64,000 nucleotides of DNA from IMGVR_UViG_3300031951_021456:183933-247932, one strand, 5' to 3'; numbered from the stretch's first letter, positions 3,382 to 28,129 are shown. Translations and numbers: made by a program. The notes: generated by a model not told the origin, from the letters alone.

Positions 3382-3726
3382 TCATGCTTTTTTAATTAGT
3401 GTGTTTAAGAATTTTCCAAATTCGTTGTTTAATGCACTTCCAATATAGAATTGTAGAAGCCTTTCTCCATAATTTTCCAAAGTTGAAAGTTCATCATAAT
3501 GTGATTTAAAAACTGGCTTCCATTCCATCTGATGTCTATGTAGACACTCTTTGTTGACAATAATTTTAAATTCTATGATAGGAATGAGATCAACCGAAAT
3601 TCTTTCAGATTGTTGAAATACTATGGACTTTTCATCCTCAAACATATTATATGTTGGAATAGTAACTCCATTCTGCTTGAGTGTTTCTTCTTGATCTTTA
3701 TCAAGTTTAAAGGTGCTGTATAACAT
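3382..3726 (-). CDS. Hypothetical protein
   Basis: 114-aa ORF in operon. Confidence 0.65.
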   Translation of the reverse strand: MLYSTFKLDKDQEETLKQNGVTIPTYNMFEDEKSIVFQQSERISVDLIPIIEFKIIVNKECLHRHQMEWKPVFKSHYDELSTLENYGERLLQFYIGSALNNEFGKFLNTLIKKA

Positions 3727-3729
3727 TGA

Positions 3730-4248
3730 TCAATTAGGGATTTTAATAAGATCTTCTCTGAGACATGTAAGAACTTGACCAAGCCAATTGGTTCCTCTCC
3801 AGTTTTTAGGGTCTTGAATGCCTACTGCACCTTCAGCCATTCCAATTCCCCAAACAGTATCGGTTGGAGATGCCTCAACCAAATAATGATCTACAGTGTT
3901 CATAAGATATTCAAAGGCATTTTTATCTTGAGTGAACTTATAAAAACAACCTTCATAGACAATTTGACGAGCATGTGTTCGCCAAACTTGCAAATCAAAA
4001 TTTTTCAATGTTCTCCCTAGTTCTTTTTGTTGTCTTGGATGTTTCTGTCTCATAATAGTTTGAGCACTTTCAAAATCATTAAATAGAAGAGCTTTTTGTT
4101 GCATCATATATTGCTCTGAGCAATTGTAAGGAATGCAAGTTCTAGTGTCAATGAATGGCGTGAATGCCCAATTAGAAAGATAGCCATAATAAAAGAAATG
4201 ATAGTTGTTAAATATCTCAAGATAATTTTGTTCTTTAAATGTAATCAT
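3730..4248 (-). CDS. NADAR family protein (YbiA / T4 gp30.3-like)
   Basis: LSNW...YNCSEQYMMQQKALLFND...QKELGR...KFTQ...LVEASPTDTVWGIG...WRGTNWLGQVL matches the NADAR signature. Confidence 0.92.
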   Translation of the reverse strand: MITFKEQNYLEIFNNYHFFYYGYLSNWAFTPFIDTRTCIPYNCSEQYMMQQKALLFNDFESAQTIMRQKHPRQQKELGRTLKNFDLQVWRTHARQIVYEGCFYKFTQDKNAFEYLMNTVDHYLVEASPTDTVWGIGMAEGAVGIQDPKNWRGTNWLGQVLTCLREDLIKIPN

Positions 4249-7778: not shown

Positions 7779-8234
7779 TTAAATATGTGTTATTATTCTC
7801 TCATTATCCTTAGCTCTAAGAATGACTTGTTCTCCATCAGTGCTTGCTTTCTTTGCAATTTTGTAAAGAGCTATGGCACGACGGAACACTTCAGCACCGT
7901 TCATTCCGGTGTCTTTCTGTATCTCATCAAACTCTCGCGCTAGTTCTTCGCTCATTCTTATGCTGAAGCTATCAGAAGGTGTTGAGATGGCTATAGAAGG
8001 TTCAGCAAATGGTTCTAGAAAATCAATAATTTCTCTAATTTTAGCAGAGTCTAAAGTGTGATTGTCTACGATCCAGGGAAGGCCTGTTTCATTATAATAA
8101 TATAGTTCTACATATTCTTTGCCATTTTTAGTATATTTTGATGCACTAAGAGTGCAAGAATCTGTAATTTCTAGAGTTTGTTTGTTAATCTCAGTGGTTG
8201 TCATTGAACTAATAATTGTTTTCTGAATTTTCAA
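7779..8234 (-). CDS. Fusion protein with a C-terminal RHH domain
   Basis: FSIRMSEELAREFDEIQKDTGMNGAEVFRRAIALYKIAK. Confidence 0.75.
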   Translation of the reverse strand: MKIQKTIISSMTTTEINKQTLEITDSCTLSASKYTKNGKEYVELYYYNETGLPWIVDNHTLDSAKIREIIDFLEPFAEPSIAISTPSDSFSIRMSEELAREFDEIQKDTGMNGAEVFRRAIALYKIAKKASTDGEQVILRAKDNERIITHI

Positions 8235-8296: not shown

Positions 8297-9097
8297 TTAC
8301 ATATACTCTTCTTTAAAACATTCATATCCAGATAACCTAATAGTTTCCTCTCGCCACTTTCTATTTCTTTCTGGAATTTCGCGATAATGAATGTTAATTG
8401 GAATCATTTCAGAACCATCAATATCATTCATAGCATTCCAAAACAATTCATTAAACTTAGAGTCTTTTTTCTGCGTTGAAAATATTGCTAATTTCTTATT
8501 TGGGAACATTGATAGTGCTACAGATAGATCTTCAACAACGGTAGAACTAAAGAAAGCAAATTCGTCTAAAATTAAAAAGTCAAAAGATCTATAATCTTCA
8601 GAATCTCTCCGAGATGAGCAAAATTTAATTTTTGATCCATTTTCAAATGTTATTGAATTTGAATTAATTTCAGTAACCCAATCTTCAAAATATTTGTTAG
8701 TGTTTAAATCATCACAAAATTGCTTAGTAATATCTAATAGTCTTTTAGATTCACTGTAATTAAAACAAACAATTCCAACTTTAGATTTATCATTAAAAAT
8801 TGCATAATGAATAGCAGATATTAATGACAGGGTTGATTTTGTGGATTGTCTAGGCATTTTAAAAATTGTTTGCCTATTGCTGTTAATTGTATTTAACACA
8901 TATTTTTGATAAGGATCTAATTCAATCTTTTTACGTTTAATTGCATCATAGTTTAAAAATTTAAGACAATTAATTGCAAAAATATCTGGATGATCTTTAA
9001 ATATAAAATAGTTCTTTGTTGCACCAGGATTATGTTTAATGCTAGTTCCCGTTAAGGCTTTGATGAATAATTTGACGTTTTTAAATAGACTTTTCAT
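8297..9097 (-). CDS. Terminase large subunit (gp17)-like ATPase domain only
   Basis: LDPYQ (Q motif), MPRQSTKST (degenerate Walker A), LILDEFAF (Walker B), FSTQ (coupling motif), ends at WREETIRLSGYECFKEEY; no nuclease domain. Confidence 0.8.
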   Translation of the reverse strand: MKSLFKNVKLFIKALTGTSIKHNPGATKNYFIFKDHPDIFAINCLKFLNYDAIKRKKIELDPYQKYVLNTINSNRQTIFKMPRQSTKSTLSLISAIHYAIFNDKSKVGIVCFNYSESKRLLDITKQFCDDLNTNKYFEDWVTEINSNSITFENGSKIKFCSSRRDSEDYRSFDFLILDEFAFFSSTVVEDLSVALSMFPNKKLAIFSTQKKDSKFNELFWNAMNDIDGSEMIPINIHYREIPERNRKWREETIRLSGYECFKEEYM

Positions 9098-9810: not shown

Positions 9811-10238
9811 CCAATAAAGAGCTGTAAAACCGGTAATGTATAATTTAGCTCCACCAGTAATAGAGAACCCCCAATAAGCTCCTTAGTCGCCAAGAATGCC
9901 TTAAATGCAGCATCATTTAATGCATTATTTTTATGATATATTGTATTATATACTGCCTCTGAAGCGATATAAGCAAAACTATCTTTCATTTCCCCGTTAA
10001 TCATTATAACAGAAGGAATAATTGTTCTAATTTTAGTTAAATAACTGCACCTAGGCCCAATCATATAATTCTTTTCTTCATTAATAGATTTTAGACGTTT
10101 AATGGATAAAGTATCCAAGTAAATCCAGAAGTTCAATACATCTTTCCAATTGGGTCCTAGAAAACGTTCAGGGTACTCTAGAGCAGTTTGGTCATTTAAG
10201 AGATCTACAAATCTTTGATGTGTTGTAGAGATTTTCAT
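9798..10238 (-). CDS. LGPNW-family paralog 1
   Basis: MKIS...DQTALEYPERFLGPNWKDVLNFWIYLDTL...ATKELIG; start overlaps the ligase stop. Confidence 0.85.
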   Translation of the reverse strand: MKISTTHQRFVDLLNDQTALEYPERFLGPNWKDVLNFWIYLDTLSIKRLKSINEEKNYMIGPRCSYLTKIRTIIPSVIMINGEMKDSFAYIASEAVYNTIYHKNNALNDAAFKAFLATKELIGGSLLLVELNYTLPVLQLFIGCDN

Positions 10239-11107
10239 AAATCATCCTCATGTCTGAAACCCAAAAACACTGCATGTCTTGGGAGATCCTTGACACCATG
10301 TTGAAAAAATTTATATTTTACATATTTACCAATATATTCTTCTTTATTGTTCCAAATTTCATCTCTCAGTTCGTCATTTAATCCAGAGCCTATTTTAATT
10401 ATTTGACCATCCTTATTTTTTGTAATAAGTTTGCCAGTTGTTTTAGCACCTATAAGACCCTCAATAGAAGTAGATCGCTTAATTCTACCAAAAGCATCCA
10501 ATTGAGCTTCATTCTCATTGTGCATTTTTTCCTCAATGTCAATAAGAATTGATTCTGCATCTTCAAATCTTTTAACTTTCAGAAGAATATTTTCATTAAC
10601 ACTTGATCTGCCAAACTTGTAAGTCCCATAAGGATCTCTTAGCATCATTCCTTCATAGCCATTGTTCAAATAGATTTCTTCTAGTTCATTTAATTGCTCT
10701 TGATTATAAATTGTAGTTCCATAAAGAATTTCATGATTAAGACTCTTAGGAATTAAAGGAAAGTTTAGAATTCTTAAGTAATATGGAAGAATTTCTGGTT
10801 CTAATGGATTCACATAATCAAATAACCAAACTTTAAAATCTGGCTCACCATCAATAGACATAACGGCAGATTGAGAATCTTGAAAGTTATTGCCTGAAGT
10901 TATTTCGCCATCAATTCCATCTGGCAATGTTTCTGAAAGAACTTTTTGAATGTATAGATTTCTTAAGGGTTTAAATGTTCTAGAAAGGGCAATTCCATCA
11001 ATCATGAGAAAACGAATGCCATCAATCTTTGGTGTTGCAATATATGGAAATTTAGCTTTCTCTGGGTTAAACTTTCCTGCAAGTAATGGCTTTTGAATTT
11101 TTGGCAT
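10235..11107 (-). CDS. ATP-dependent DNA ligase, minimal chlorovirus-like type
   Basis: KPLLA, ATPKIDGIR (adenylated Lys), SRTFKP, DGEI, YEGMMLR, YKFGRS, LLKVK, IGSG, PRHAVFLGFRHEDD. Confidence 0.95.
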   Translation of the reverse strand: MPKIQKPLLAGKFNPEKAKFPYIATPKIDGIRFLMIDGIALSRTFKPLRNLYIQKVLSETLPDGIDGEITSGNNFQDSQSAVMSIDGEPDFKVWLFDYVNPLEPEILPYYLRILNFPLIPKSLNHEILYGTTIYNQEQLNELEEIYLNNGYEGMMLRDPYGTYKFGRSSVNENILLKVKRFEDAESILIDIEEKMHNENEAQLDAFGRIKRSTSIEGLIGAKTTGKLITKNKDGQIIKIGSGLNDELRDEIWNNKEEYIGKYVKYKFFQHGVKDLPRHAVFLGFRHEDDL

Positions 11108-12088: not shown

Positions 12089-12304
12089 TTACAATCCCAC
12101 AACATGATACATCTCGCCTTGAGCATTCTTAAACAAAACTTTTCCATTGTTTTTCTCTATATTTTTTGCCTCCTTGTATAAGGCAACTGCGCGGCGAAAA
12201 ATCTCTGCATGAGTGAGGCCAGTTGAATCACTGATGCTATCAAGCTGATCAGCTAACTCTTCTGGCATTTGAACATCAAAACGTAATCTATCAGTAATTG
12301 TCAT
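12089..12304 (-). CDS. Ribbon-helix-helix (CopG-like) regulator
   Basis: FDVQMPEELADQLDSISDSTGLTHAEIFRRAVALYK. Confidence 0.85.
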   Translation of the reverse strand: MTITDRLRFDVQMPEELADQLDSISDSTGLTHAEIFRRAVALYKEAKNIEKNNGKVLFKNAQGEMYHVVGL

Positions 12305-12707: not shown

Positions 12708-12735
12708 ACTATACATGAGTTTCAAAATTTGTCAA
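12708..12735 (-). promoter_or_regulatory. Sigma70-like promoter driving the leftward block
   Basis: TTGACA-16 nt-TATAGT on the minus strand, at the outer end of the inverted-repeat left arm. Confidence 0.7.
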
Positions 12736-12872
12736 GTACCTAAGGCGCTTATTAGCATTTCCTGACTTAGTATAAGTACCTATTGACAGACCTTCAATAA
12801 TCATGTACGCTCAGCTTTGTCAAAGATGATGCACGATAACTTAAGTGTCTTAAAGAACTTAAATACTCTTAA
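12721..12872. repeat. Left arm of a ~150-bp inverted repeat (partner 16319-16470)
   Basis: 12806-12872 is the exact reverse complement of 16319-16385 (67 bp); further matching blocks CCTGACTTAGTATAAGTACCTATTGACAGACCTT and TTCAAAAT.TGTCAAGTACC. Confidence 0.95.
12783..12811 (+). promoter_or_regulatory. Inward-facing sigma70-like promoter in the left arm
   Basis: TTGACA-17 nt-TACGCT. Confidence 0.55.
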
Positions 12873-12950
12873 AGATACTTAAGTTTTTTATATAACTTAA
12901 ATACTCTTAAGTAACTTAAAGAACTTAAATACTCTTAAAGATACTTAAGT
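12840..12950. repeat. Phased CTTAA array with two exact 36-bp direct repeats (iteron-like)
   Basis: CTTAA at 12840, 12849, 12858, 12868, 12878, 12896, 12906, 12915, 12924, 12934, 12944; the 36-mer CTTAAAGAACTTAAATACTCTTAAAGATACTTAAGT occurs at 12849 and 12915. Confidence 0.9.
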
Positions 12951-12995
12951 AAGTTAAAGAACTTTAATAACTAATTAAAAACAAACTTAAATAAA

Positions 12996-13199
12996 ATGAA
13001 TAAACTTTCTCCTGAAGCACTTAAACAAAGATCATTCATTCTAAGTGCATTTACAAGATTAAAAATGTCTATTTCAACAAGTATCTATGAATTTGCAGAT
13101 TATAAAATTAAAACTGGATGGGCTCCATCTTTAAATGATTTAACTAAAGTAGATCAAGAAATTCTAGAAGAGTATATGAAGTTTATTAAAAATAAATAG
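12996..13199 (+). CDS. Small hypothetical protein
   Basis: 67 aa; first plus-strand ORF after the repeat array. Confidence 0.65.
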   Translation: MNKLSPEALKQRSFILSAFTRLKMSISTSIYEFADYKIKTGWAPSLNDLTKVDQEILEEYMKFIKNK

Positions 13200-13219
13200 A
13201 GTAACTCAACTCTAATATA

Positions 13220-13774
13220 ATGACTGATTCTTGTTCTCCTATTGAAAATAGAAATTTTTTATCTCCAAACCAATTTAAATTAACAATCAAACGATGCCCA
13301 AAGGCATCGTTTTTTTCAAATTCTGGAAATATTCCTTCTTTAACTCTAGGAATTGCAAAACAATCAAACTACCTAAAGACTATCAGTCAACCTGGAGATA
13401 TGATAGATTTTCAAGACTTTATTTTCAAGTTTCTTGTAGATGAAGATTTAACAAATTATCTTGAAATACAAAATTGGATTAGAGGTCTTGGATATCCATT
13501 CAGTCTTCAACAAATTTACGATTTGCAAAAAGAAAGACCAGATCTTAAGACAAATATTACGAATCAATTGAATTTATTCTCAGATGGAACTCTTTCAATT
13601 CTTTCAAGCAATAATAAATCAAATTTTCAAGTAAGATTTTATGATTTATGGCCATATGATCTTTCTTCACTTCTATTTGATTCAACGAGCACAGATTCTC
13701 AATATTTTACAGCAGAGGTAAAAATGAAATATACATACTATGACATAAGAAATTCAAGTGGTGAACTTTTATGA
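13220..13774 (+). CDS. gp3: Tail completion / tail-tube terminator gp3-like protein
   Basis: NRNFLSPNQFK...FLVDEDLTNYLEIQNWIRGLG...FYDLWPYDLSSLLFD; position before uvsY-uvsW as in T4-like cyanophages; TAAATA at 13193. Confidence 0.8.
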   Translation: MTDSCSPIENRNFLSPNQFKLTIKRCPKASFFSNSGNIPSLTLGIAKQSNYLKTISQPGDMIDFQDFIFKFLVDEDLTNYLEIQNWIRGLGYPFSLQQIYDLQKERPDLKTNITNQLNLFSDGTLSILSSNNKSNFQVRFYDLWPYDLSSLLFDSTSTDSQYFTAEVKMKYTYYDIRNSSGELL

Positions 13775-14211
13775 AAATTCTTGATCTTCCCTCCATTCAA
13801 CAAATGTGGAAGGAAGATGCTAAAATTGATATTGACGATTTACACAACGAATCAGTAAAAATACCAGAACTCCATGCAAAATACTATGAAATTTATTCAA
13901 ATCTTTTACTTTTAAAGAAAAAGACCGAAGAAGATAAGAAACAAATCAGACATAAAAAATATGAATATTTTACAGGTAAAGCTGAACCAGAAGCATACAT
14001 TAAAGATCCATTAGATAAGAAAGTAAGAGATAAAGAGCATTTACAAAGTTGTCTTAATTCTGATGAAGAAATTTCAAGAATTAACATCAAGATTGAAATT
14101 TACGATGTGTCACTTGATTATATTCAAGACATCATTAAGATGATTCATAATCGCTCATTTCAAATTAAAAATAGTATTGAAGCAATAAGATTACTAGGAG
14201 ATTCTCACTAA
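13771..14211 (+). CDS. uvsY: Recombination mediator UvsY
   Basis: MWKED..ID...LH.KY...KKYEYFTGKA...R.FQIKNSIE; synteny. Confidence 0.88.
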   Translation: MKILDLPSIQQMWKEDAKIDIDDLHNESVKIPELHAKYYEIYSNLLLLKKKTEEDKKQIRHKKYEYFTGKAEPEAYIKDPLDKKVRDKEHLQSCLNSDEEISRINIKIEIYDVSLDYIQDIIKMIHNRSFQIKNSIEAIRLLGDSH

Positions 14212-14237
14212 ATAGACACAACTAAGCATTTCTTATC

Positions 14238-15710
14238 ATGGCTGATGTTGTGATTGTTAAAAAGAATGAGGTTCACATCAAATTAAAATGTGAACCTCAT
14301 ATTTTATATGAATTGCATCCTTACTTTACATTTGAAGTAAATAGTGCAAAGTATATGAAAAAATATCGCAAAGGTTGGAATGGTCTTGTAACTTTACTGA
14401 GTGTTACAACTGGAGAAGTGTATGCAGGGCTTATTGATAGGGTTATTGCAAAATTAAAGGCTCTTGGTTATTCTTATGAGTTTGAGCATAGTAAGTATTA
14501 TGGCAGCCCATTTGAAGTTAATGAAGAGATAACAAAAGAAGGCTGTCAGGGGTTTTTAAAGGCTGTATGTAAGACATTAGATCCTTATGACTATCAAATC
14601 AATGCAGTATATGAGTGTTTAAGATATAATAGAAAGACAATTATTTCAGCAACTTCTTCTGGAAAAAGCTATATCATTTATGGTTTGATAAGATATCATA
14701 TTCTTAAACAAAGAAAATGTCTAGTTGTATTTCCAACAACTGGTCTAGTTAAGCAGATGTTTTCAGACTGGAAATCTTATGGATGGAATCCCGAGAACCA
14801 TTGTCATTTAATCTATGACGGTTCTGAGAAAAGAAATGATTTTGAAGTAACTCTTTCAACTTGGCAATCTTTAGATAATTGTCCTAAATCTTTTTTTGAA
14901 GAGTTTGATTGCATTATTGTAGATGAGTGTCATGGATGTAAGGCAAAAAGTCTTACAAACATCATGAAGAACTGTCATCAAGCAAAGTATCGTTATGGCT
15001 TTACTGGAACTCTTACTAATGGTGGTGAAGATTCAAAGACTCATGAATGGGTTATTTCAGGTTTATTTGGCCCATCTTATAAAGCAATAGGAACTAAAGA
15101 ACTCATTGAAAAAGGAAGAGCCTCGCAATTAGATATTCAATGTATTGTTCTTAAACATACTTCAAGATCTTTTGAATCTTATCAAGATGAAATTAAGTAT
15201 CTCATTGAGAACGAAAAGAGAAATAGATTCATTAAAAATCTTTCTCTTGACATTAAAGGAAATACTCTAATTCTTTTTGAAAGAGTTGAAACACATGGAC
15301 AGATTCTTTTTGACTTAATAAATAATGATGCAGACAATCATAAGATATATTTCGTTCATGGTGGAGTTGATACAGATGAACGGGAAGAGATAAGAAACAT
15401 TGTAGAGAGAGAAAATAATGCAATCATTGTTGCATCTTACGGAGTATTCAGTACAGGTATCTCAATCAAGAATCTACACAATCTTATCTTTGCTTCACCC
15501 TTTAAGTCTCGTATTAGAAATATGCAGAGTATTGGTAGATTATTAAGACTTAATCACAATAAAAAGGTTGCAAAGGTTTATGATCTTTCTGATGATATTT
15601 CATTTAATGATAGACCAAATTATACATTGAAGCATTTTATGGAAAGAGTTAAAAATTACAATGAAGAAGGATTTGATTATGACATTAAAACAATTAAACT
15701 AGGAGAATGA
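14238..15710 (+). CDS. uvsW: UvsW SF2 DNA helicase
   Basis: ATSSGKS (Walker A variant), IVDECH, GFTGT, QSIGRLLR; TAAATA at 14209. Confidence 0.95.
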   Translation: MADVVIVKKNEVHIKLKCEPHILYELHPYFTFEVNSAKYMKKYRKGWNGLVTLLSVTTGEVYAGLIDRVIAKLKALGYSYEFEHSKYYGSPFEVNEEITKEGCQGFLKAVCKTLDPYDYQINAVYECLRYNRKTIISATSSGKSYIIYGLIRYHILKQRKCLVVFPTTGLVKQMFSDWKSYGWNPENHCHLIYDGSEKRNDFEVTLSTWQSLDNCPKSFFEEFDCIIVDECHGCKAKSLTNIMKNCHQAKYRYGFTGTLTNGGEDSKTHEWVISGLFGPSYKAIGTKELIEKGRASQLDIQCIVLKHTSRSFESYQDEIKYLIENEKRNRFIKNLSLDIKGNTLILFERVETHGQILFDLINNDADNHKIYFVHGGVDTDEREEIRNIVERENNAIIVASYGVFSTGISIKNLHNLIFASPFKSRIRNMQSIGRLLRLNHNKKVAKVYDLSDDISFNDRPNYTLKHFMERVKNYNEEGFDYDIKTIKLGE

Positions 15711-15943
15711 AATTGGAAAAAACTATTGACAGAATAAATGCTGAGAATAAAGCTTTAACTAAAACTGGAAATTTTACTATATGGACAACTCTTATTGGGG
15801 CTGTTTTACTAGGAGCTGTTCCTGGTATTCCTACATTTGTCCTCTTATTATATCCTATACTAGGATGTTCTATAACAGTCAATATTCTCAATAAAAGGCA
15901 TGATAACTCAATTGAAATTATGTCATTAGATAAAGATGGATGA
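15707..15943 (+). CDS. Small membrane protein
   Basis: Hydrophobic central segment; coupled to the uvsW stop. Confidence 0.6.
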   Translation: MKLEKTIDRINAENKALTKTGNFTIWTTLIGAVLLGAVPGIPTFVLLLYPILGCSITVNILNKRHDNSIEIMSLDKDG

Positions 15944-16322
15944 AGAATTTTATGCAGTAGTAAAACTTAAGAATGGTGAAGAGTTCTTTTCTCAAGTGTG
16001 TTTAACTGAAGAAGATGATAAGGAAGTTCTACTTTTATATCATCCTATTACTCTTACTCTAGTAAGAACTAAAAAGGGGTTTGATTATCTTGTTCAGCCT
16101 TGGATTAAAATTGGTAATGAAAGTTTATATGTTCTTAATAAAGAAGATATTCTTACTATGTCTGAACTTGAGGATATTGATCTTATACAAATGCACACTA
16201 AATATGTTACTTCTAAAGAACAGACTAATTTTCATCAAGAAAATCTAAGCCCATCTTTAGGTCATATTGGAACAGTTTCAGAAGCTAAGAATAAACTTGA
16301 AAGAATATTTGAGAATTCTTAA
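15936..16322 (+). CDS. Conserved T4-like cyanophage hypothetical protein
   Basis: FYAVVKLKNGEEFFSQV; usually follows uvsW in this phage group (recalled); stop lies inside the inverted-repeat right arm. Confidence 0.75.
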   Translation: MDEEFYAVVKLKNGEEFFSQVCLTEEDDKEVLLLYHPITLTLVRTKKGFDYLVQPWIKIGNESLYVLNKEDILTMSELEDIDLIQMHTKYVTSKEQTNFHQENLSPSLGHIGTVSEAKNKLERIFENS

Positions 16323-16470
16323 GAGTATTTAAGTTCTTTAAGACACTTAAGTTATCGTGCATCATCTTTGACAAAGCTGAGCGTAGCAGGTTCTTAAAGG
16401 TCTGTCAATAGGTACTTATACTAAGTCAGGGTTTCTTGACAATGTTTAAGGGTACTTGACATATTTTGAA
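16319..16470. repeat. Right arm of the ~150-bp inverted repeat
   Basis: Reverse complement of 12721-12872 with a 67-bp perfect core. Confidence 0.95.
16380..16408 (-). promoter_or_regulatory. Inward-facing (antisense) sigma70-like promoter in the right arm
   Basis: TTGACA-17 nt-TACGCT on the minus strand. Confidence 0.5.
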
Positions 16471-16484
16471 TGAGGTGCTATTGT
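16456..16484 (+). promoter_or_regulatory. Outward sigma70-like promoter
   Basis: TTGACA-17 nt-TATTGT. Confidence 0.65.
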
Positions 16485-16801: not shown

Positions 16802-17002
16802 ATGAAATTATTTTCATATATGATTCCCACAGAAATAGATCATGATTTAACATACCTAGAAGACAACACCGGGATGTCTCGTGCTGAAATTTTTCGCAGA
16901 GCGATTGCTCTCTATAAGCGAGCTAAGCAAACAGAGAAAGACAAAGGGAATGTAATTCTCAGAAATTCAGACGGAACACTTAGAGAGGTTATTGGTTTTT
17001 AA
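16802..17002 (+). CDS. Ribbon-helix-helix regulator
   Basis: YMIPTEIDHDLTYLEDNTGMSRAEIFRRAIALYKRAK; start moved from 16736. Confidence 0.8.
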   Translation: MKLFSYMIPTEIDHDLTYLEDNTGMSRAEIFRRAIALYKRAKQTEKDKGNVILRNSDGTLREVIGF

Positions 17003-17190: not shown

Positions 17191-17232
17191 TCTGTTAAAT
17201 TATTCTCTCTACGAATAATACCTGAAGGGCAC

Positions 17233-17266
17233 TTGACAAACTCTCATTAACATGCTATGCTAAATA
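17233..17266 (+). promoter_or_regulatory. Overlapping sigma70 (TTGACA-17-TATGCT) and late (TAAATA) promoters
   Basis: Both motifs precede the ATG at 17287. Confidence 0.65.
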
Positions 17267-17964: not shown

Positions 17965-18480
17965 ATGATAACAACATCAGTAATGGAAAAAAAGAAAAGA
18001 AGAACACATTATGTAATTAATGCTGACTTTTATGATGCTCTAATTAAATACAAAGATCGTGTAAAACAAGCAGAAGAAAAAGAACAACCAAAACCAAGAA
18101 TCCCTGAATATATTGGTAAGTGTTTTTTGGAAATTGCAAATCATTTAGCATTTACTCCAAAATTTATAAACTACTCATATAAAGATTTAATGATCTCTGA
18201 TGGTTATACTGATTGTGTGAAATATGTTTTAAATTTTGATCCATATTTTAAGGGTGGAAAAACGGTTAAGAATCCTTTCTCTTACTTTACAACAATTTGT
18301 TATTGGGCATTTGTTCGTAGAATTAAACAAGAGAAAAAAACTCTAGAGCTTTATGATATGCTTCTAGAAAAGAATGGATTTGATGAAGTCTTTCATGATG
18401 ATTCAGCAGATGGAGATTATTCAAACTATTCCGATTTTAATAGCATCAAAGATTCTGTGCATTCAAGAATGAGATATTGA
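17965..18480 (+). CDS. gp55: Late-transcription sigma factor gp55
   Basis: HYVINADF...IPEYIGKCFLEIANHL...MISDG...NFDP...NPFSYFTTICYWAFVRRIKQEKK. Confidence 0.95.
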   Translation: MITTSVMEKKKRRTHYVINADFYDALIKYKDRVKQAEEKEQPKPRIPEYIGKCFLEIANHLAFTPKFINYSYKDLMISDGYTDCVKYVLNFDPYFKGGKTVKNPFSYFTTICYWAFVRRIKQEKKTLELYDMLLEKNGFDEVFHDDSADGDYSNYSDFNSIKDSVHSRMRY

Positions 18481-22830: not shown

Positions 22831-23503
22831 AACAATTGAAATTCTTAGTAATTTCTCTTCTATTAATAACTCAATTATCATTTCTCCAGGAAGCGTAATT
22901 AAAACAATTAATTCTGAACGAAATGTTTTTGCAAAAGCAACAGTTCAAGAAACATTTCCTCGTGATATTCCAATCTATGAATTAAGAGAGTTTCTCAATA
23001 TCTTTAAAATTCATAAAGATGCTGATGTTGATTTTTCAGATGAACAATATATTCTAGTTCAACATAATCGCACTCGCATGAAGTTTTATTATGCAGATTT
23101 ATATTCTCTCTCTAAAAATTTAAATCTTCCTGACAGAGATTATGTACTTGATGATGTCGTTCTGAGTATTAATCTAGAATCTGAACAAATTGAAAGAGTA
23201 AGAAAAGCTGCAAATTATTACAGTCTTAATGATCTATCTTTGACTGGGGCTGAAGGAAGAATTGAGTTGCTAGTTCATAATAAAGAAGATTCAACCTCAA
23301 AGTCTTATAATGTTGAGATTGGTGAAACTGAAAATCAGTTTTGTTTCAATCTTATTGAAAAAAACATTAAGATTCTTTCGGGATCTTATATGCTTGAAAT
23401 TGCTAGAGTTAATGATAGTAATTTTGCAGCTAGATTCATCAATCAAAATCAAGAGCTTGAATATTTTATCGCTACAGAGCCCGATAGTTCTTATGACGAT
23501 TAA
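22814..23503 (+). CDS. gp45: Sliding clamp gp45
   Basis: MKLSPETIEILSNFSSINNSI...EYFIATEPDS. Confidence 0.93.
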   Translation: MKLSPETIEILSNFSSINNSIIISPGSVIKTINSERNVFAKATVQETFPRDIPIYELREFLNIFKIHKDADVDFSDEQYILVQHNRTRMKFYYADLYSLSKNLNLPDRDYVLDDVVLSINLESEQIERVRKAANYYSLNDLSLTGAEGRIELLVHNKEDSTSKSYNVEIGETENQFCFNLIEKNIKILSGSYMLEIARVNDSNFAARFINQNQELEYFIATEPDSSYDD

Positions 23504-23858
23504 GATTTCCAAGACACATCAAAAATTTGCATATCGCTTAAAAGACCAAACTGCTCTAGAATACCCTGAACGTTTTCTAGGACCCAATTGGAAGAATGTA
23601 TTGAACTTTTGGTTTTATTTGGATACTTTGAGTGTTGAAGATTTTGAGATAGTTTATGATCGTTATTGGGATTTGGATGATCTGAGTGCCATAAAGAATC
23701 TTGCTTGGAAAGCTGTTAAAGATACTATAGAATATTATAATGCAAATGAAGCTTGGTGTGCTACTGCTGGTATTGCTACACGTTGCGCGACTTGTGAACT
23801 CATTGGCTCACACAATCTTAAGTCTTTGAATTTTCTTCCCTTGTTTTTGAATTTATGA
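23493..23858 (+). CDS. LGPNW-family paralog 2 (start moved from 23310)
   Basis: KISKTHQKF...LGPNWKNVLNFW...ATCELIGSH...FLPLF. Confidence 0.85.
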   Translation: MTIKISKTHQKFAYRLKDQTALEYPERFLGPNWKNVLNFWFYLDTLSVEDFEIVYDRYWDLDDLSAIKNLAWKAVKDTIEYYNANEAWCATAGIATRCATCELIGSHNLKSLNFLPLFLNL

Positions 23859-24250
23859 AAATCTCTAAGACTCATCAAACTCTTTCAGAAGTAATGGATG
23901 ATATAAGAGTTCTTACTGAACCTGAAAACTATCTAGGAACTAACTGGAAAGAAGTCTTAAATTTCTGGATCTTTCTAGATACTATGAATGAAGAGCAGTG
24001 GAATAGTATTAATGTTGCTTATTCTTCTTTAAGTTGGGATGAACGAGATGCTTCATTTCTAGAAATTCTTAATCTTGCTAGAGATCTTCGTGGTGTGCGT
24101 TCTGCATGGCTTGCTGCTTCTAGATATTATCTTGCTGCTTCTAGTTGTCGCGGGGCTTCTGGTTTTGCAACATATGAACTTATTAATTCTCATAAGCGTA
24201 AAAAACAAGGAAAATCTTTAGTCTATTTTCCATTATTTTTAAATATATGA
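23855..24250 (+). CDS. LGPNW-family paralog 3
   Basis: MKISKTHQ...LGTNWKEVLNFW...ATYELINSH. Confidence 0.85.
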   Translation: MKISKTHQTLSEVMDDIRVLTEPENYLGTNWKEVLNFWIFLDTMNEEQWNSINVAYSSLSWDERDASFLEILNLARDLRGVRSAWLAASRYYLAASSCRGASGFATYELINSHKRKKQGKSLVYFPLFLNI

Positions 24251-26479: not shown

Positions 26480-26872
26480 GTGAATAACCCAGAACTTAAA
26501 GATTGGTTAAATTCAATCAATTTCTCTAAGGAAAATCTCTTAGATGAAACTCCAGAATCAGTTTCATCTTATCAGCCATACATCATCAATAAATGTATGG
26601 CTAGTCATTTAGATGCTATACTGTTTGTAAATGAGCTAAACCAACTTCCATATATTGATAAGCGAATGCAATACGCTTATTATCTCTATGCTCTAAGACC
26701 AAGAAAAAGATATGCCCCTTGGTTAAAAAGGGAAACCGCAGATAATCTTTCTGCGGTTAAAGAATATTATGGATTTAGTGACAAGAAAGCTTTAGATGCT
26801 TTAAAGGTTCTAAATAGAGACGAAATTATTTTCATTAAACAACGACTGAATAAAGGTGGATTTAAAAAATGA
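26480..26872 (+). CDS. gp62: Clamp loader small subunit gp62
   Basis: LKDWLNSIN...YQPYIINKCM...VKEYYGFSDKKA...L. Confidence 0.92.
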   Translation: MNNPELKDWLNSINFSKENLLDETPESVSSYQPYIINKCMASHLDAILFVNELNQLPYIDKRMQYAYYLYALRPRKRYAPWLKRETADNLSAVKEYYGFSDKKALDALKVLNRDEIIFIKQRLNKGGFKK

Positions 26873-27294
26873 GTGAATTGAACAAAGATGGATACATTAA
26901 TTGGGATTCATCCATGATGATTGAAGTGACACTTGATCAACCAGATACATTTTTGGTTGTTAAAGAAACACTTCAGCGTGTTGGAATTTGTAGTAAGCAT
27001 GAAAAGAAACTCTTTCAGAGTGCACATATTCTCCACAAATCTGGAAAATATTATATCGTTTCTTATAAAGAGTTATTTGCCCTTGATGGAAAGTATTGTA
27101 CTTTAACTCAATCTGATTTACAGAGACGTAATAGAATTGCAAAGCTTTTAAGTGATTGGGGCCTTATTACAATTGTTAATCCTGAACAAATTACAGATAT
27201 GGCTCCTTTGAGTCTTATTAAAGTTCTTGCATATAAAGATCGCCAAGATTATGAACTTATTACTAAGTACACAATTGGTGGAAAACGTAAGTGA
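26869..27294 (+). CDS. regA: Translational repressor RegA
   Basis: FLVVKETLQRVGI...LFQSAHILHKSGKYYIVSYKELFALDG...RRNRIAKLL.DWGL. Confidence 0.95.
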   Translation: MSELNKDGYINWDSSMMIEVTLDQPDTFLVVKETLQRVGICSKHEKKLFQSAHILHKSGKYYIVSYKELFALDGKYCTLTQSDLQRRNRIAKLLSDWGLITIVNPEQITDMAPLSLIKVLAYKDRQDYELITKYTIGGKRK

Positions 27295-27773
27295 AAATCT
27301 CGAGGTCACATAGACGCTTTGCACTTTGTTTAGAAGATCAAACTGCTCTAGAATATCCTGAGGATTTTTTAGGACCTAATTGGAAGGATGTACTGAACTT
27401 CTGGATTTATTTGGATACTTTAAGTGAGGAACAGATAAAAATTGTTATAGAGAGTTTTAATGTAGTATGTCCAGTTGAATATACTGCTTATTATGGTTTC
27501 CTTGTGCATTCTGACTATAATGGTTTTCAAGGTGATGCTATGAATGCTGCTCAAAAAACATCTAATTTTTTTATTGAAGCTTCTGCATCAGCAGTTTGTA
27601 GCTCTTCTATAGCTGTTGCTACAGATACTAATAACCTTTACATAAGCTCTATAGACTATATAAAATCTGGCAACTGGGCTGCAGGTCGTGCAACCTATGA
27701 ACTAATCGGTTCACACTTTCTCCTAGATAACAACAAACCATTAACCTTTTTTCCATTGTTTTTAAATTTGTGA
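27291..27773 (+). CDS. LGPNW-family paralog 5
   Basis: Constant N and C termini; GTG start overlaps the regA TGA. Confidence 0.85.
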   Translation: MKISRSHRRFALCLEDQTALEYPEDFLGPNWKDVLNFWIYLDTLSEEQIKIVIESFNVVCPVEYTAYYGFLVHSDYNGFQGDAMNAAQKTSNFFIEASASAVCSSSIAVATDTNNLYISSIDYIKSGNWAAGRATYELIGSHFLLDNNKPLTFFPLFLNL

Positions 27774-28129
27774 AAATCTCGAGGGCACATAGACGCTTTG
27801 CACTTTCTTTAGAGGATCAAACTGCTCTAGAATACCCTGAACGTTTTCTAGGACCTAATTGGAAGAATGTACTGAACTTCTGGATTTATTTGGATGATTT
27901 AAGTGTTGATAAACTTTCTATAATTTATGCACATTATCATGATTTGAGAGACGTGCATACATTAAGGAGTCTTGCAGTGAAAGCTGCTGTAGATACTATA
28001 GGTGGTGAATATAAAACTGCAGCCTGGTGTGCCACTACTAATTCTATTGGGGTTTTGGCAATTTACGAACTCATTGGCTCACATAATCTTGAGACCTTGG
28101 CATTTCTTCCTTTGTTTATAAATCCATGA
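27770..28129 (+). CDS. LGPNW-family paralog 6
   Basis: Constant N and C termini. Confidence 0.85.
   Translation: MKISRAHRRFALSLEDQTALEYPERFLGPNWKNVLNFWIYLDDLSVDKLSIIYAHYHDLRDVHTLRSLAVKAAVDTIGGEYKTAAWCATTNSIGVLAIYELIGSHNLETLAFLPLFINP

What the first reader, a model, noticed from the sequence alone, without database searches (positions are those of the whole stretch)
12721..16470. ~150-bp inverted repeat with back-to-back promoters brackets gp3-uvsY-uvsW at the strand switch
Seen: the arms at 12721-12872 and 16319-16470 share a 67-bp perfect core. Each arm has an outward TTGACA promoter and an inward TTGACA-17-TACGCT promoter followed by identical AT-rich sequence. The gene strand flips at the left arm. 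Known: T4 origins such as ori(uvsY) are a promoter plus a downstream unwinding element primed by R-loops, which UvsW removes. Inference: either a pair of converging R-loop origins flanking their own regulator uvsW, or a recombination-invertible 3.4-kb segment whose flanking promoters survive inversion. The right inward promoter would also make antisense RNA to uvsW.
Basis: partly seen in the sequence, partly recalled or inferred. Interest (0 to 1): 0.75.

Follow-up and report, generated by a model that had tools for sequence, protein, structure and literature searches.

The report
Repeated two-way phage promoter cassette
The inverted repeat is real, but its arms are two of three copies of a conserved back-to-back promoter module that a group of uncultured T4-like phages keeps at the edges of a core gene block; a second role as a replication start site is possible but untested.

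Summary
The arms are w12721-12887 and w16304-16470, 127 nt at 91%, with a perfect 67-bp core. They bracket a 67-aa ORF, gp3, uvsY, uvsW, a 78-aa ORF and an Sm-like ORF.

The pair is not unique. The 248-kb genome holds a third copy at 65,952-66,178. The module occurs in a clade of uncultured T4-like phages, with the same orientations wherever both arm positions are covered.

Each copy has two divergent sigma-70-type promoters, an invariant box at about +5, and very AT-rich DNA downstream. In this lineage that DNA is an array of CTTAA units spaced 9-10 bp apart. The outward promoters head the DNA-ligase block and the gp55 operon. The left inward promoter leads into the core block. The right inward promoter is antisense to Sm-like and uvsW.

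The copies are homogenised by gene conversion.

The invertible-segment reading is not supported. No recombinase gene was found, and one orientation appears in five lineages and in every assembly.

The R-loop-origin reading fits the anatomy (promoter plus an easily melted element at strand switches) but is untested.

Best reading: a new variant of the repeated promoter cassettes known from T4-like phages. Interest is moderate.

The parts
12708..12972 (.). Left copy (L) of the cassette: outward promoter, inward promoter, +5 box and CTTAA array
   Evidence: Inverted repeat with the right copy. One of exactly three full nhmmer matches in the genome.
12708..12735 (-). P_out(L): TTGACA-16-TATAGT, pointing left into the - strand accessory block that includes DNA ligase
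   Evidence: Promoter scan, 11 of 12 matches. Positions checked. In relative L029 the same promoter sits directly upstream of the ligase ORF.
12783..12811 (+). P_in(L): TTGACA-17-TACGCT, pointing right into the 67-aa ORF and the gp3-uvsY-uvsW block
   Evidence: Positions checked. Conserved in all clade members.
12814..12825 (+). +5 box GCTTTGTCAAAG, which holds an inverted copy of the -35 heptamer. Function unexplained.
   Evidence: Present in every clade copy, including those recovered with a pattern that did not require it.
12836..12972 (+). Array of 11 CTTAA units (plus decayed units) spaced 9-10 bp, very AT-rich. A candidate protein-binding array or DNA-unwinding element.
   Evidence: TRF: period 9, 14.7 copies. 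Unit spacing and logo. CTTAA clusters occur only at the three cassettes. Third least stable 100-bp window of the genome.
12996..13199 (+). 67-aa ORF, first gene after P_in(L). Conserved in the clade and in other Kyanoviridae, deleted in L026.
   Evidence: No Pfam or PHROG hit.
13188..13200 (+). T4-type late-promoter-like motif (ATAAATA) upstream of gp3
   Evidence: The only intergenic match in w12000-19600 (the other, w15317, lies inside uvsW). Conserved upstream of gp3 in relatives.
13220..13774 (+). gp3-like tail completion protein
   Evidence: phrog_45, E 6e-37. Annotated gp3 in P-TIM68 and S-SM2 homologues.
13771..14211 (+). uvsY recombination mediator
   Evidence: Pfam UvsY, E 6e-33.
14253..14313 (.). 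Strong hairpin in the first 25 codons of uvsW (13-bp perfect arms at 14266-14300), terminator-like on both strands
   Evidence: (I9). Arms identical in L009. Four substitutions relative to the third clade all improve pairing.
14238..15710 (+). uvsW helicase
   Evidence: Pfam ResIII, Helicase_C and UvsW_N.
15707..15943 (+). 78-aa ORF, absent in L029
   Evidence: No family hit.
15936..16322 (+). Sm-like ORF (phrog_471). Its stop codon abuts the right copy.
   Evidence: Pfam Sm_like, E 1e-8. phrog_471, E 8e-31.
16304..16484 (.). Right copy (R) of the cassette, inverted relative to L
16380..16408 (-). P_in(R): TTGACA-17-TACGCT pointing left, antisense to Sm-like, the 78-aa ORF and uvsW. Followed by the +5 box (16377-16366) and four CTTAA units (16352-16319).
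   Evidence: Positions checked. Intact in all five contigs that cover both arm positions.
16456..16484 (+). P_out(R): TTGACA-17-TATTGT pointing right towards small ORFs, an RHH gene and gp55-gp47
   Evidence: Promoter scan, 10 of 12 matches. In L029 it lies about 250 bp upstream of gp55 with one short ORF between.
12089..12304 (-). Ribbon-helix-helix (RHH) protein downstream of P_out(L). Candidate regulator.
   Evidence: Pfam RHH_1, E 5e-6. Paralogue of the RHH at 16802-17002.
16802..17002 (+). RHH paralogue downstream of P_out(R)
   Evidence: 44% identical to the left RHH.
10235..11107 (-). ATP-dependent DNA ligase in the block driven by P_out(L)
   Evidence: Pfam DNA_ligase_OB_2, E 4e-14.
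17965..18480 (+). gp55 late sigma factor, downstream of P_out(R)
   Evidence: phrog_234, E 7.5e-51.
17213..17261 (+). Partial fourth copy, outward-promoter half only (TTGACA-17-TATGCT)
   Evidence: nhmmer E 0.013. Promoter scan. Sequence.

Best explanation
The two arms are copies L and R of a 170-230-bp bidirectional early-promoter cassette. The cassette is present three times in this 248-kb T4-like phage genome and is conserved in a clade of uncultured relatives.

Each cassette carries these elements:
- an outward sigma-70-type promoter;
- about 75 bp away, an inward promoter TTGACA-17-TACGCT;
- an invariant box at about +5;
- a very AT-rich stretch, expanded in this lineage into a CTTAA array with 9-10-bp spacing.

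L and R sit at the two ends of the core block (67-aa ORF, gp3, uvsY, uvsW, Sm-like). Their outward promoters start the early operons on either side: the DNA-ligase accessory block leftwards and the gp55-gp47 operon rightwards. The inverted arrangement follows from that geometry.

P_in(L) gives non-late transcription into the core block. P_in(R) gives convergent antisense transcription over Sm-like and uvsW.

The copies are kept alike by occasional gene conversion between them.

Shown here: the repeat family, its anatomy, its conservation and its homogenisation. Inferred: promoter activity, timing, and any regulatory effect of the antisense transcript.
For: There are exactly three full copies in the genome.

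The module was recovered in about a dozen related IMG/VR contigs besides this phage's own near-identical ones. One is a 243-kb genome with three copies in the same relative orientations.

Every contig that covers both arm positions has both arms inverted, 3.2-3.4 kb apart.

Both promoters keep TTGACA, a 16-17-bp spacer and TAnnnT in all copies.

The outward promoters lie directly upstream of the ligase gene and about 250 bp upstream of gp55 in L029. Ordinary Kyanoviridae have a single related promoter upstream of gp55 and no inverted repeat.

Accessory ORFs differ between relatives exactly next to the cassettes.

Concerted evolution is visible in three ways.
- The three G000 copies cluster together (support 100/99) and the L009/L026 copies cluster together (99/95).
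- In a third clade, copies cluster by position instead.
- Copy T is a mosaic, R-like upstream and L-like in the spacer.

In the third clade, positions of the R copies that were not used to find them are more conserved than fourfold-degenerate sites of the adjacent gene, for example 0.86 against 0.64.
Against: There are no transcript data.

In this AT-rich region, consensus promoter matches are no more frequent than in shuffled sequence: 27 found against 28 expected.

The -10 hexamer TACGCT matches only 3 of 6 consensus bases.

A generic early promoter should occur far more than three times.

Promoter function does not explain the +5 box or the strictly periodic CTTAA array.

P_in(R) has no gene to express, yet it is kept intact.

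P_in(L) persists in L026, where the 67-aa ORF is deleted. This hints at a role beyond expressing that ORF.
Confidence: 0.6

Rival explanations
1. The cassettes are replication origins of the T4 R-loop type. Transcripts from the inward promoters would form persistent RNA-DNA hybrids in the easily melted array and prime leading-strand synthesis. P_in(L) would be the counterpart of T4 ori(uvsY). This reading would add to the promoter reading rather than replace it.
For: T4 oriF and oriG need only about 100 bp: a promoter plus an AT-rich downstream unwinding element. T4 oriE uses an early promoter and has evenly spaced direct repeats. T4 oriE, oriF and oriG lie where transcription diverges and skew shifts (PMC3016281).

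Here the arrays of copies L and T are the 3rd and 4th least stable 100-bp windows of the whole genome.

The 50 bp after the start site are among the least stable 0.1-1% of most relatives' loci, including R copies where no gene follows.

L and T lie at strand switches, and L lies at the cumulative GC-skew minimum.

There are only three copies per genome.

P_in(L) is the only non-late-type promoter found upstream of uvsY.
Against: A strong promoter with an AT-rich untranslated leader looks the same.

The two least stable windows of the genome are ordinary AT-rich coding sequence.

GC skew follows gene strand throughout, so it carries no separate replication signal.

T4 origins share no sequence with each other, so repetition is not an origin trait.

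L and R would fire towards each other across 3.4 kb.

The conserved CTTAA core with variable spacers points to a sequence-specific binder. A non-specific unwinding element would not need it.
Confidence: 0.22
2. The CTTAA array, and perhaps the repeated TTGTCAA boxes, is an operator array for a phage DNA-binding protein. The obvious candidates are the ribbon-helix-helix (RHH) paralogues transcribed from the cassettes. They would shut these early promoters off by feedback.
For: The CTTAA core is invariant in 46 of 48 units, while the spacers vary and the spacing stays at 9 or 10 bp in G000, L009 and L026.

Array-less relatives keep one or two ATTAAAG units at 10-bp spacing at the same place.

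Three of the four RHH paralogues in the genome lie within 2.5 kb of a cassette, each downstream of one of its promoters.

An RHH gene also lies 2.7 kb downstream of copy T in L021.
Against: L029 covers both arms and has no RHH gene nearby.

Of 28 IMG/VR loci with an RHH homologue, 22 have no cassette or array within 4 kb.

L009 has arrays, but no RHH hit was found in its 9.8 kb.

There is no binding evidence.
Confidence: 0.15
3. The 3.4-kb block is a switchable invertible segment that flips by recombination between the arms. The flanking promoters would remain functional in either orientation.
For: The geometry allows it. Arms with a 67-bp perfect core are substrates for the phage's own homologous recombination, and gene conversion between copies shows that they do interact. 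After inversion each inward promoter would still face the block.
Against: The genome has no serine or tyrosine recombinase. Both searches had positive controls.

The orientation is the same in G000, L009, L027, L029 and the 243-kb genome.

It is also the same in the identical assemblies from other samples.

All eight R copies lie between Sm-like and gp55. All eight L copies lie next to the 67-aa ORF or gp3.
Confidence: 0.04
4. The repeat is a chance match or an assembly artefact.
For: None found.
Against: The core is a perfect 67-bp match.

The same structure appears in independent assemblies from other samples.

It also appears in relatives with about 76% nucleotide identity.
Confidence: 0.01

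Closest known systems
PeSL cassettes (promoter-early stem-loops) of T4-like phages RB49/phi1, T4/PST and KVP40/nt-1 (PMC2839356, PMC4122927)
   Same: Short, well conserved sigma-70-type early-promoter cassettes repeated within one T4-like genome. They sit in or at the edges of variable accessory regions, lie next to gene-content differences between close relatives, and serve as substrates for homologous exchange.
   Different: No stem-loop terminator is part of this cassette. It is bidirectional, has only three copies, and has fixed positions across a clade. It carries a conserved +5 box and a periodic AT-rich array. One pair is inverted around a core gene block.
T4 ori(uvsY)/oriF and ori(34)/oriG R-loop origins (PMC3016281)
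   Same: A promoter followed by an AT-rich, easily unwound element within about 100 bp. It is located near uvsY and at a switch of transcription strand. A UvsW helicase is encoded next to it.
   Different: The promoter is of the early sigma-70 type with a TTGACA -35, not a MotA-dependent middle promoter. The element is a repeated sequence family, which T4 origins are not. Origin activity is untested.
[quoted passage not shown]
   Same: Early-type promoter plus evenly spaced short direct repeats, near a point of transcriptional divergence.
   Different: The repeat unit is 9-10 bp with a CTTAA core. No repEA/repEB context was examined. The role of the T4 iterons is itself unknown.
Site-specific invertible segments (Mu G, P1 C, Salmonella hin)
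   Same: Inverted repeats flank a segment of a few kilobases.
   Different: There is no invertase gene, the arms are much longer than recombinase sites, and only one orientation is seen.

Membership tests
PeSL cassette | Near-consensus sigma-70-type early promoter | tested here: met
   TTGACA with a 16-17-bp spacer and TAnnnT in both directions in all copies. This is sequence-level evidence only.
PeSL cassette | Stem-loop terminator joined to the promoter | tested here: not met
   The terminator scan finds no hairpin plus T-run in either arm. Rfam finds nothing either.
PeSL cassette | Many copies scattered through hyperplastic regions | tested here: inconclusive
   There are only three full copies plus one half copy. 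All lie at borders of variable accessory gene blocks.
PeSL cassette | Gene-content differences between relatives lie next to the cassette | tested here: met
   G000 has four ORFs between the L arm and the ligase gene and five between the R arm and gp55. L029 lacks them. The genes downstream of copy T also differ between relatives.
T4 R-loop origin (oriF/oriG type) | MotA-dependent middle-mode promoter (MotA box near -30) | tested here: not met
   The -35 region is TTGACA and there is no TGCTT box. A MotA_activ search of the genome found nothing, but its control was silent.
T4 R-loop origin (oriF/oriG type) | AT-rich downstream unwinding element within about 100 bp of the promoter | tested here: met
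   By nearest-neighbour stability, copies L and T rank 3rd and 4th least stable of all 100-bp windows. Relatives reach the 93rd-100th percentile of their loci (one T copy 85th).
T4 R-loop origin (oriF/oriG type) | Persistent R-loop and autonomous replication during infection | not testable with these tools
   This needs S9.6 mapping, two-dimensional gels or plasmid replication assays.
T4 R-loop origin (oriF/oriG type) | Position at transcriptional divergence and a skew shift (true of some T4 origins only) | tested here: inconclusive
   Copies L and T are at strand switches, and L is at the skew minimum. Copy R is not at a strand switch. Skew tracks gene strand everywhere.
Site-specific invertible segment | Invertase or recombinase gene in or next to the segment | tested here: not met
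   No Resolvase or Phage_integrase match anywhere in the genome, with positive controls. The inner ORFs are gp3, uvsY, uvsW and small ORFs.
Site-specific invertible segment | Both orientations occur in the population | tested here: not met
   One orientation in all assemblies and in five lineages. Minor isomers cannot be seen in consensus contigs.
Cyanobacterial Pho-box array (PhoB sites; definition recalled from memory, Su et al. 2007) | 8-bp PyTTAAPyPy(T/A) direct repeats with an 11-bp period, placed at the -35 region | tested here: not met
   The period is 9-10 bp. Positions 6-7 of the unit are mostly G, A or T, almost never C. The array lies downstream of the start site.

The most novel reading that the evidence does not exclude
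The three cassettes are the replication origins of this phage clade, each an early promoter plus an iteron-like, easily melted array. The inverted pair would form a timing circuit around uvsY and uvsW. P_in(L) acts like T4 ori(uvsY). P_in(R), together with the conserved bidirectional hairpin at the start of uvsW, makes a defined 2.1-kb antisense RNA. That RNA holds back the R-loop-removing helicase UvsW until late transcription takes over.
Probability: 0.15. Interest if true: 0.8.

Novelty: new variant of a known kind. Interest (0 to 1): 0.5.

Why it matters
I know of no experimentally mapped replication origin or early-to-late switch in the large cyanophage-like branch of T4-like phages, which lacks MotA and AsiA. 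A three-copy module conserved across a clade gives concrete 250-bp candidates for both functions. It combines strong divergent promoters, an invariant box at the transcription start and the most easily melted intergenic DNA of the genome. It also shows that repeated promoter cassettes, known from coliphage and vibriophage relatives of T4 as drivers of gene shuffling, exist here in a different form: bidirectional and fixed in position. In that form they evolve in concert and frame the uvsY-uvsW recombination block. The phage is uncultured, so the value for now lies in a testable hypothesis and an annotation, not in a demonstrated mechanism.

Tried and rejected
Rfam found no RNA family in either arm.

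A small ORF starting at ATGATG inside the conserved core (18-26 aa in the three G000 copies) is rejected. The start codons are absent in L009 and in all other relatives.

A tandem promoter that uses the +5 box as its -35 has no conserved -10 in G000 or L009.

The Pho-box reading of the CTTAA units fails on period, sequence and position.

The link between the RHH proteins and the array stays inconclusive. Most homologues elsewhere have no cassette nearby.

GC skew is uninformative because it follows gene strand.

A megablast of the region against GenBank phages found nothing. The distant search found only the coding genes in Kyanoviridae. P-TIM68, S-SM2 and B3 have no comparable inverted repeat or cassette.

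A scan of prokaryote genomes for the module found nothing, so it gives no host clue. psbA is absent.

A search for an inverted isomer through the left-flank anchor in JGI metagenome contigs found a single contig, in the reference orientation.

The PeSL-type stem-loop was looked for and is absent.

Full report
**Observation.** The inverted repeat is real.
- The repeat finder reports arms w12761-12887 and w16304-16430, 127 nt at 91%, extended by w12721-12740 / w16451-16470 at 95%.
- BLAST aligns w12721-12872 with w16470-16319 at 86.9%.
- The longest perfect match is 67 bp, w12806-12872 against w16319-16385.
- Both arms hold an outward promoter-like site: TTGACA-16-TATAGT at 12735..12708 on the - strand, and TTGACA-17-TATTGT at 16456..16484 on the + strand.
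- Both hold an inward TTGACA-17-TACGCT, at 12783-12811 (+) and 16408-16380 (-).
- The arms bracket a 67-aa ORF, a gp3-like tail protein, uvsY, uvsW, a 78-aa ORF and an Sm-like ORF.
- Gene strand switches at the left arm.

**Where the window lies.** The window is the last 64 kb of a 247,932-bp IMG/VR virus record with 33% G+C.
- The record encodes T4-type gp23, gp55, RegA, UvsY and UvsW.
- Its nearest named relatives, at about 65% DNA identity in uvsW, are Kyanoviridae cyanophages.
- It has no psbA.

**The pair is part of a three-copy family.** A third copy lies at genome position 65,952-66,178, in the same orientation as the left arm.
- A profile search finds exactly three full copies, plus one half copy (outward promoter only) at w17213-17261.
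- The third copy (T) also lies between divergent genes.

**Anatomy.** Reading in the direction of the inward promoter, each copy has these elements:
- the outward promoter on the opposite strand;
- one or two further TGTCAA boxes;
- a conserved stretch ending in TTGACA-17-TACGCT;
- an invariant box GCTTTGTCAAA(A)G at about +5, which is an inverted copy of the -35 heptamer;
- very AT-rich DNA.

In G000, L009 and L026 this AT-rich DNA is an array of (A/T)CTTAA(G/A) units spaced strictly 9 or 10 bp apart. There are 11 intact units (plus decayed units) in L, 9-10 in T and 4 in R, where the array stops at the stop codon of the Sm-like gene. Clusters of CTTAA occur nowhere else in the genome.

**Relatives.**
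- A pattern built from the inward promoter and the +5 box hits 19 IMG/VR loci. A pattern without the +5 box recovers the same clade, and every member has the box.
- Four contigs and one 249.5-kb metagenome contig from other samples are 99.5-100% identical to G000 and have the same arrangement.
- L009 has about 76% DNA identity. L027, L029 and a 243-kb genome are more distant. All keep both arms inverted, 3.2-3.4 kb apart, around the same block. The 243-kb genome also has a third copy in the same relative orientation.
- Every contig that covers both arm positions has both arms intact.

**Concerted evolution.**
- In a tree of the copies, the three G000 copies group together (support 100/99) and the L009/L026 copies group together (99/95). 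In the third clade, copies group by position.
- Within L009 the arms are 89% alike over 178 nt, whereas orthologous arms of G000 and L009 align at about 73-75%.
- Copy T of G000 is R-like upstream and L-like in the promoter spacer.
- The copies therefore exchange sequence from time to time.
- In the third clade, positions of the R copies that were not used to find them are more conserved than fourfold-degenerate sites of the neighbouring gene, for example 0.86 against 0.64. This indicates constraint, although part of it belongs to the outward promoter.

**What the promoters face.**
- Ordinary Kyanoviridae run gp23, a small ORF, gp3, uvsY, uvsW, the Sm-like gene, gp55, gp47 and gp46 on one strand without any inverted repeat. 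They have one promoter upstream of gp55 with a similar -35 context.
- In G000 a 21.6-kb block of - strand accessory genes lies between gp23 and the small ORF. It includes DNA ligase, NADAR and an RHH protein.
- P_out(L) heads that block. In L029, P_out(L) sits directly upstream of the ligase gene.
- P_out(R) heads the operon with gp55 and gp47. In L029 one short ORF lies between them. In G000 five small ORFs, including an RHH paralogue, have been added.
- P_in(L) leads into the 67-aa ORF. The only late-type motif upstream of gp3 lies behind that ORF, and no + strand terminator follows. P_in(L) could therefore also supply non-late transcription of gp3 and uvsY.
- P_in(R) faces the 3' end of the Sm-like gene and has no ORF of its own.

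**Test of the inversion idea.**
- The genome has no serine or tyrosine recombinase, and both searches had positive controls.
- Only the phage's homologous recombination could flip the block.
- One orientation is found in five lineages and in all assemblies.
- Rare isomers cannot be excluded from consensus contigs, but nothing suggests a switch.

**Test of the origin idea.**
- The T4 review defines oriF and oriG as a promoter plus an AT-rich unwinding element within about 100 bp. It notes evenly spaced repeats and an early promoter at oriE, and it notes that oriE, oriF and oriG lie at points of transcriptional divergence (PMC3016281).
- The cassette fits this outline. The arrays of L and T are the 3rd and 4th least stable 100-bp windows of the genome.
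- In most relatives the 50 bp after the predicted start site are among the least stable 0.1-1% of the locus, even in R copies. That percentile takes the best of 16 windows and is therefore somewhat inflated.
- Against the idea, the two least stable windows of the genome are plain coding sequence, and skew follows gene strand.
- T4 origins are not a repeat family.
- The conserved CTTAA core with free spacers points to a specific binder rather than to a non-specific unwinding element.
- I rate this reading at about one in five.

**The antisense reading.** The geometry is confirmed and conserved.
- In G000 and L009 a 13-bp perfect hairpin sits in codons 10-21 of uvsW, followed by T-runs on both strands.
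- Four substitutions relative to the third clade all strengthen the hairpin.
- Together with P_in(R), it would delimit a 2.1-kb antisense unit over uvsW, the 78-aa ORF and the Sm-like gene, leaving uvsY untouched.
- This is inference only.

**The array and the RHH proteins.**
- Four RHH paralogues exist in G000. Three lie within 2.5 kb of a cassette, each downstream of one of its promoters.
- One lies likewise downstream of copy T in L021.
- L029 has none near its arms. Of 28 loci with a homologue elsewhere, 22 lack the cassette.
- The link is a lead, not a result.

**Comparison and verdict.**
- The closest described objects are the PeSL promoter cassettes of T4-like coliphages and vibriophages (PMC2839356, PMC4122927).
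- This cassette shares four traits with them: it is a repeated early promoter, it sits at variable regions, it adjoins gene-content differences, and it takes part in recombination.
- It differs in five ways: it lacks the stem-loop, it is bidirectional, it has three fixed copies, it carries the +5 box, and it carries the periodic array.
- It works like a PeSL in part but is not a member of that family.
- It resembles a T4 origin in outline, but the defining activity cannot be tested here.
- I file it as a new variant of a known kind, of moderate interest.

Noticed in passing
window 14253-14313 (core 14266-14300); L009 4080-4114: A strong hairpin lies inside the first 25 codons of uvsW and is terminator-like on both strands. 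Its arms are identical in G000 and L009. Four substitutions relative to the third clade all improve pairing. It is absent in P-TIM68 and S-SM2.
   Followed up: partly
window 12089-12304 (-), 16802-17002 (+), 7779-8234 (-); genome 68565-68699 (+); L021 5767-5979 and 6086-6427: A family of small ribbon-helix-helix proteins with a conserved AEIFRRA-ALYK motif. There are four paralogues in this genome, and homologues in 28 IMG/VR loci from large phage contigs.
   Followed up: partly
window 23310-24250 and 27770-28129; genome 7.7-9.7 kb, 32-33.6 kb, 50-51 kb, 71-72 kb, 82-84 kb, 89-90 kb, 178-180 kb, 236 kb: A large paralogous family of ORFs of about 120-180 aa, with more than 20 DNA matches at 68-78% identity across the genome and no Pfam hit.
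   Followed up: no
L011 86-118, L012 6785-6817, L014 158-190: Arrays of CTTAAG units spaced 9-10 bp apart also occur in IMG/VR contigs that show no other similarity to this phage. In L014 there are about ten CTTAAGTAA units.
   Followed up: no
L026 about 3483-3700: In this relative the 67-aa ORF is deleted. The inward promoter and its array run straight into the late-promoter motif and gp3.
   Followed up: no
window 8297-9097 (-) and 3730-4248 (-): A 266-aa ORF with a T4-type terminase large-subunit N-terminal domain and a NADAR-domain ORF sit in the - strand accessory block, far from the structural genes.
   Followed up: no
window 26869-27294 (+): A RegA translational repressor homologue, Pfam Translat_reg, E 1e-38.
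   Followed up: no
whole record G000: IMG/VR labels this complete 248-kb T4-like genome a provirus. It has no integrase or resolvase and no psbA.
   Followed up: partly
L029 10036-10257: A 73-aa ORF made of near-perfect tandem repeats (EEIRLREETEKLREE-like) lies between the right-arm outward promoter and gp55. It is absent from G000.
   Followed up: no
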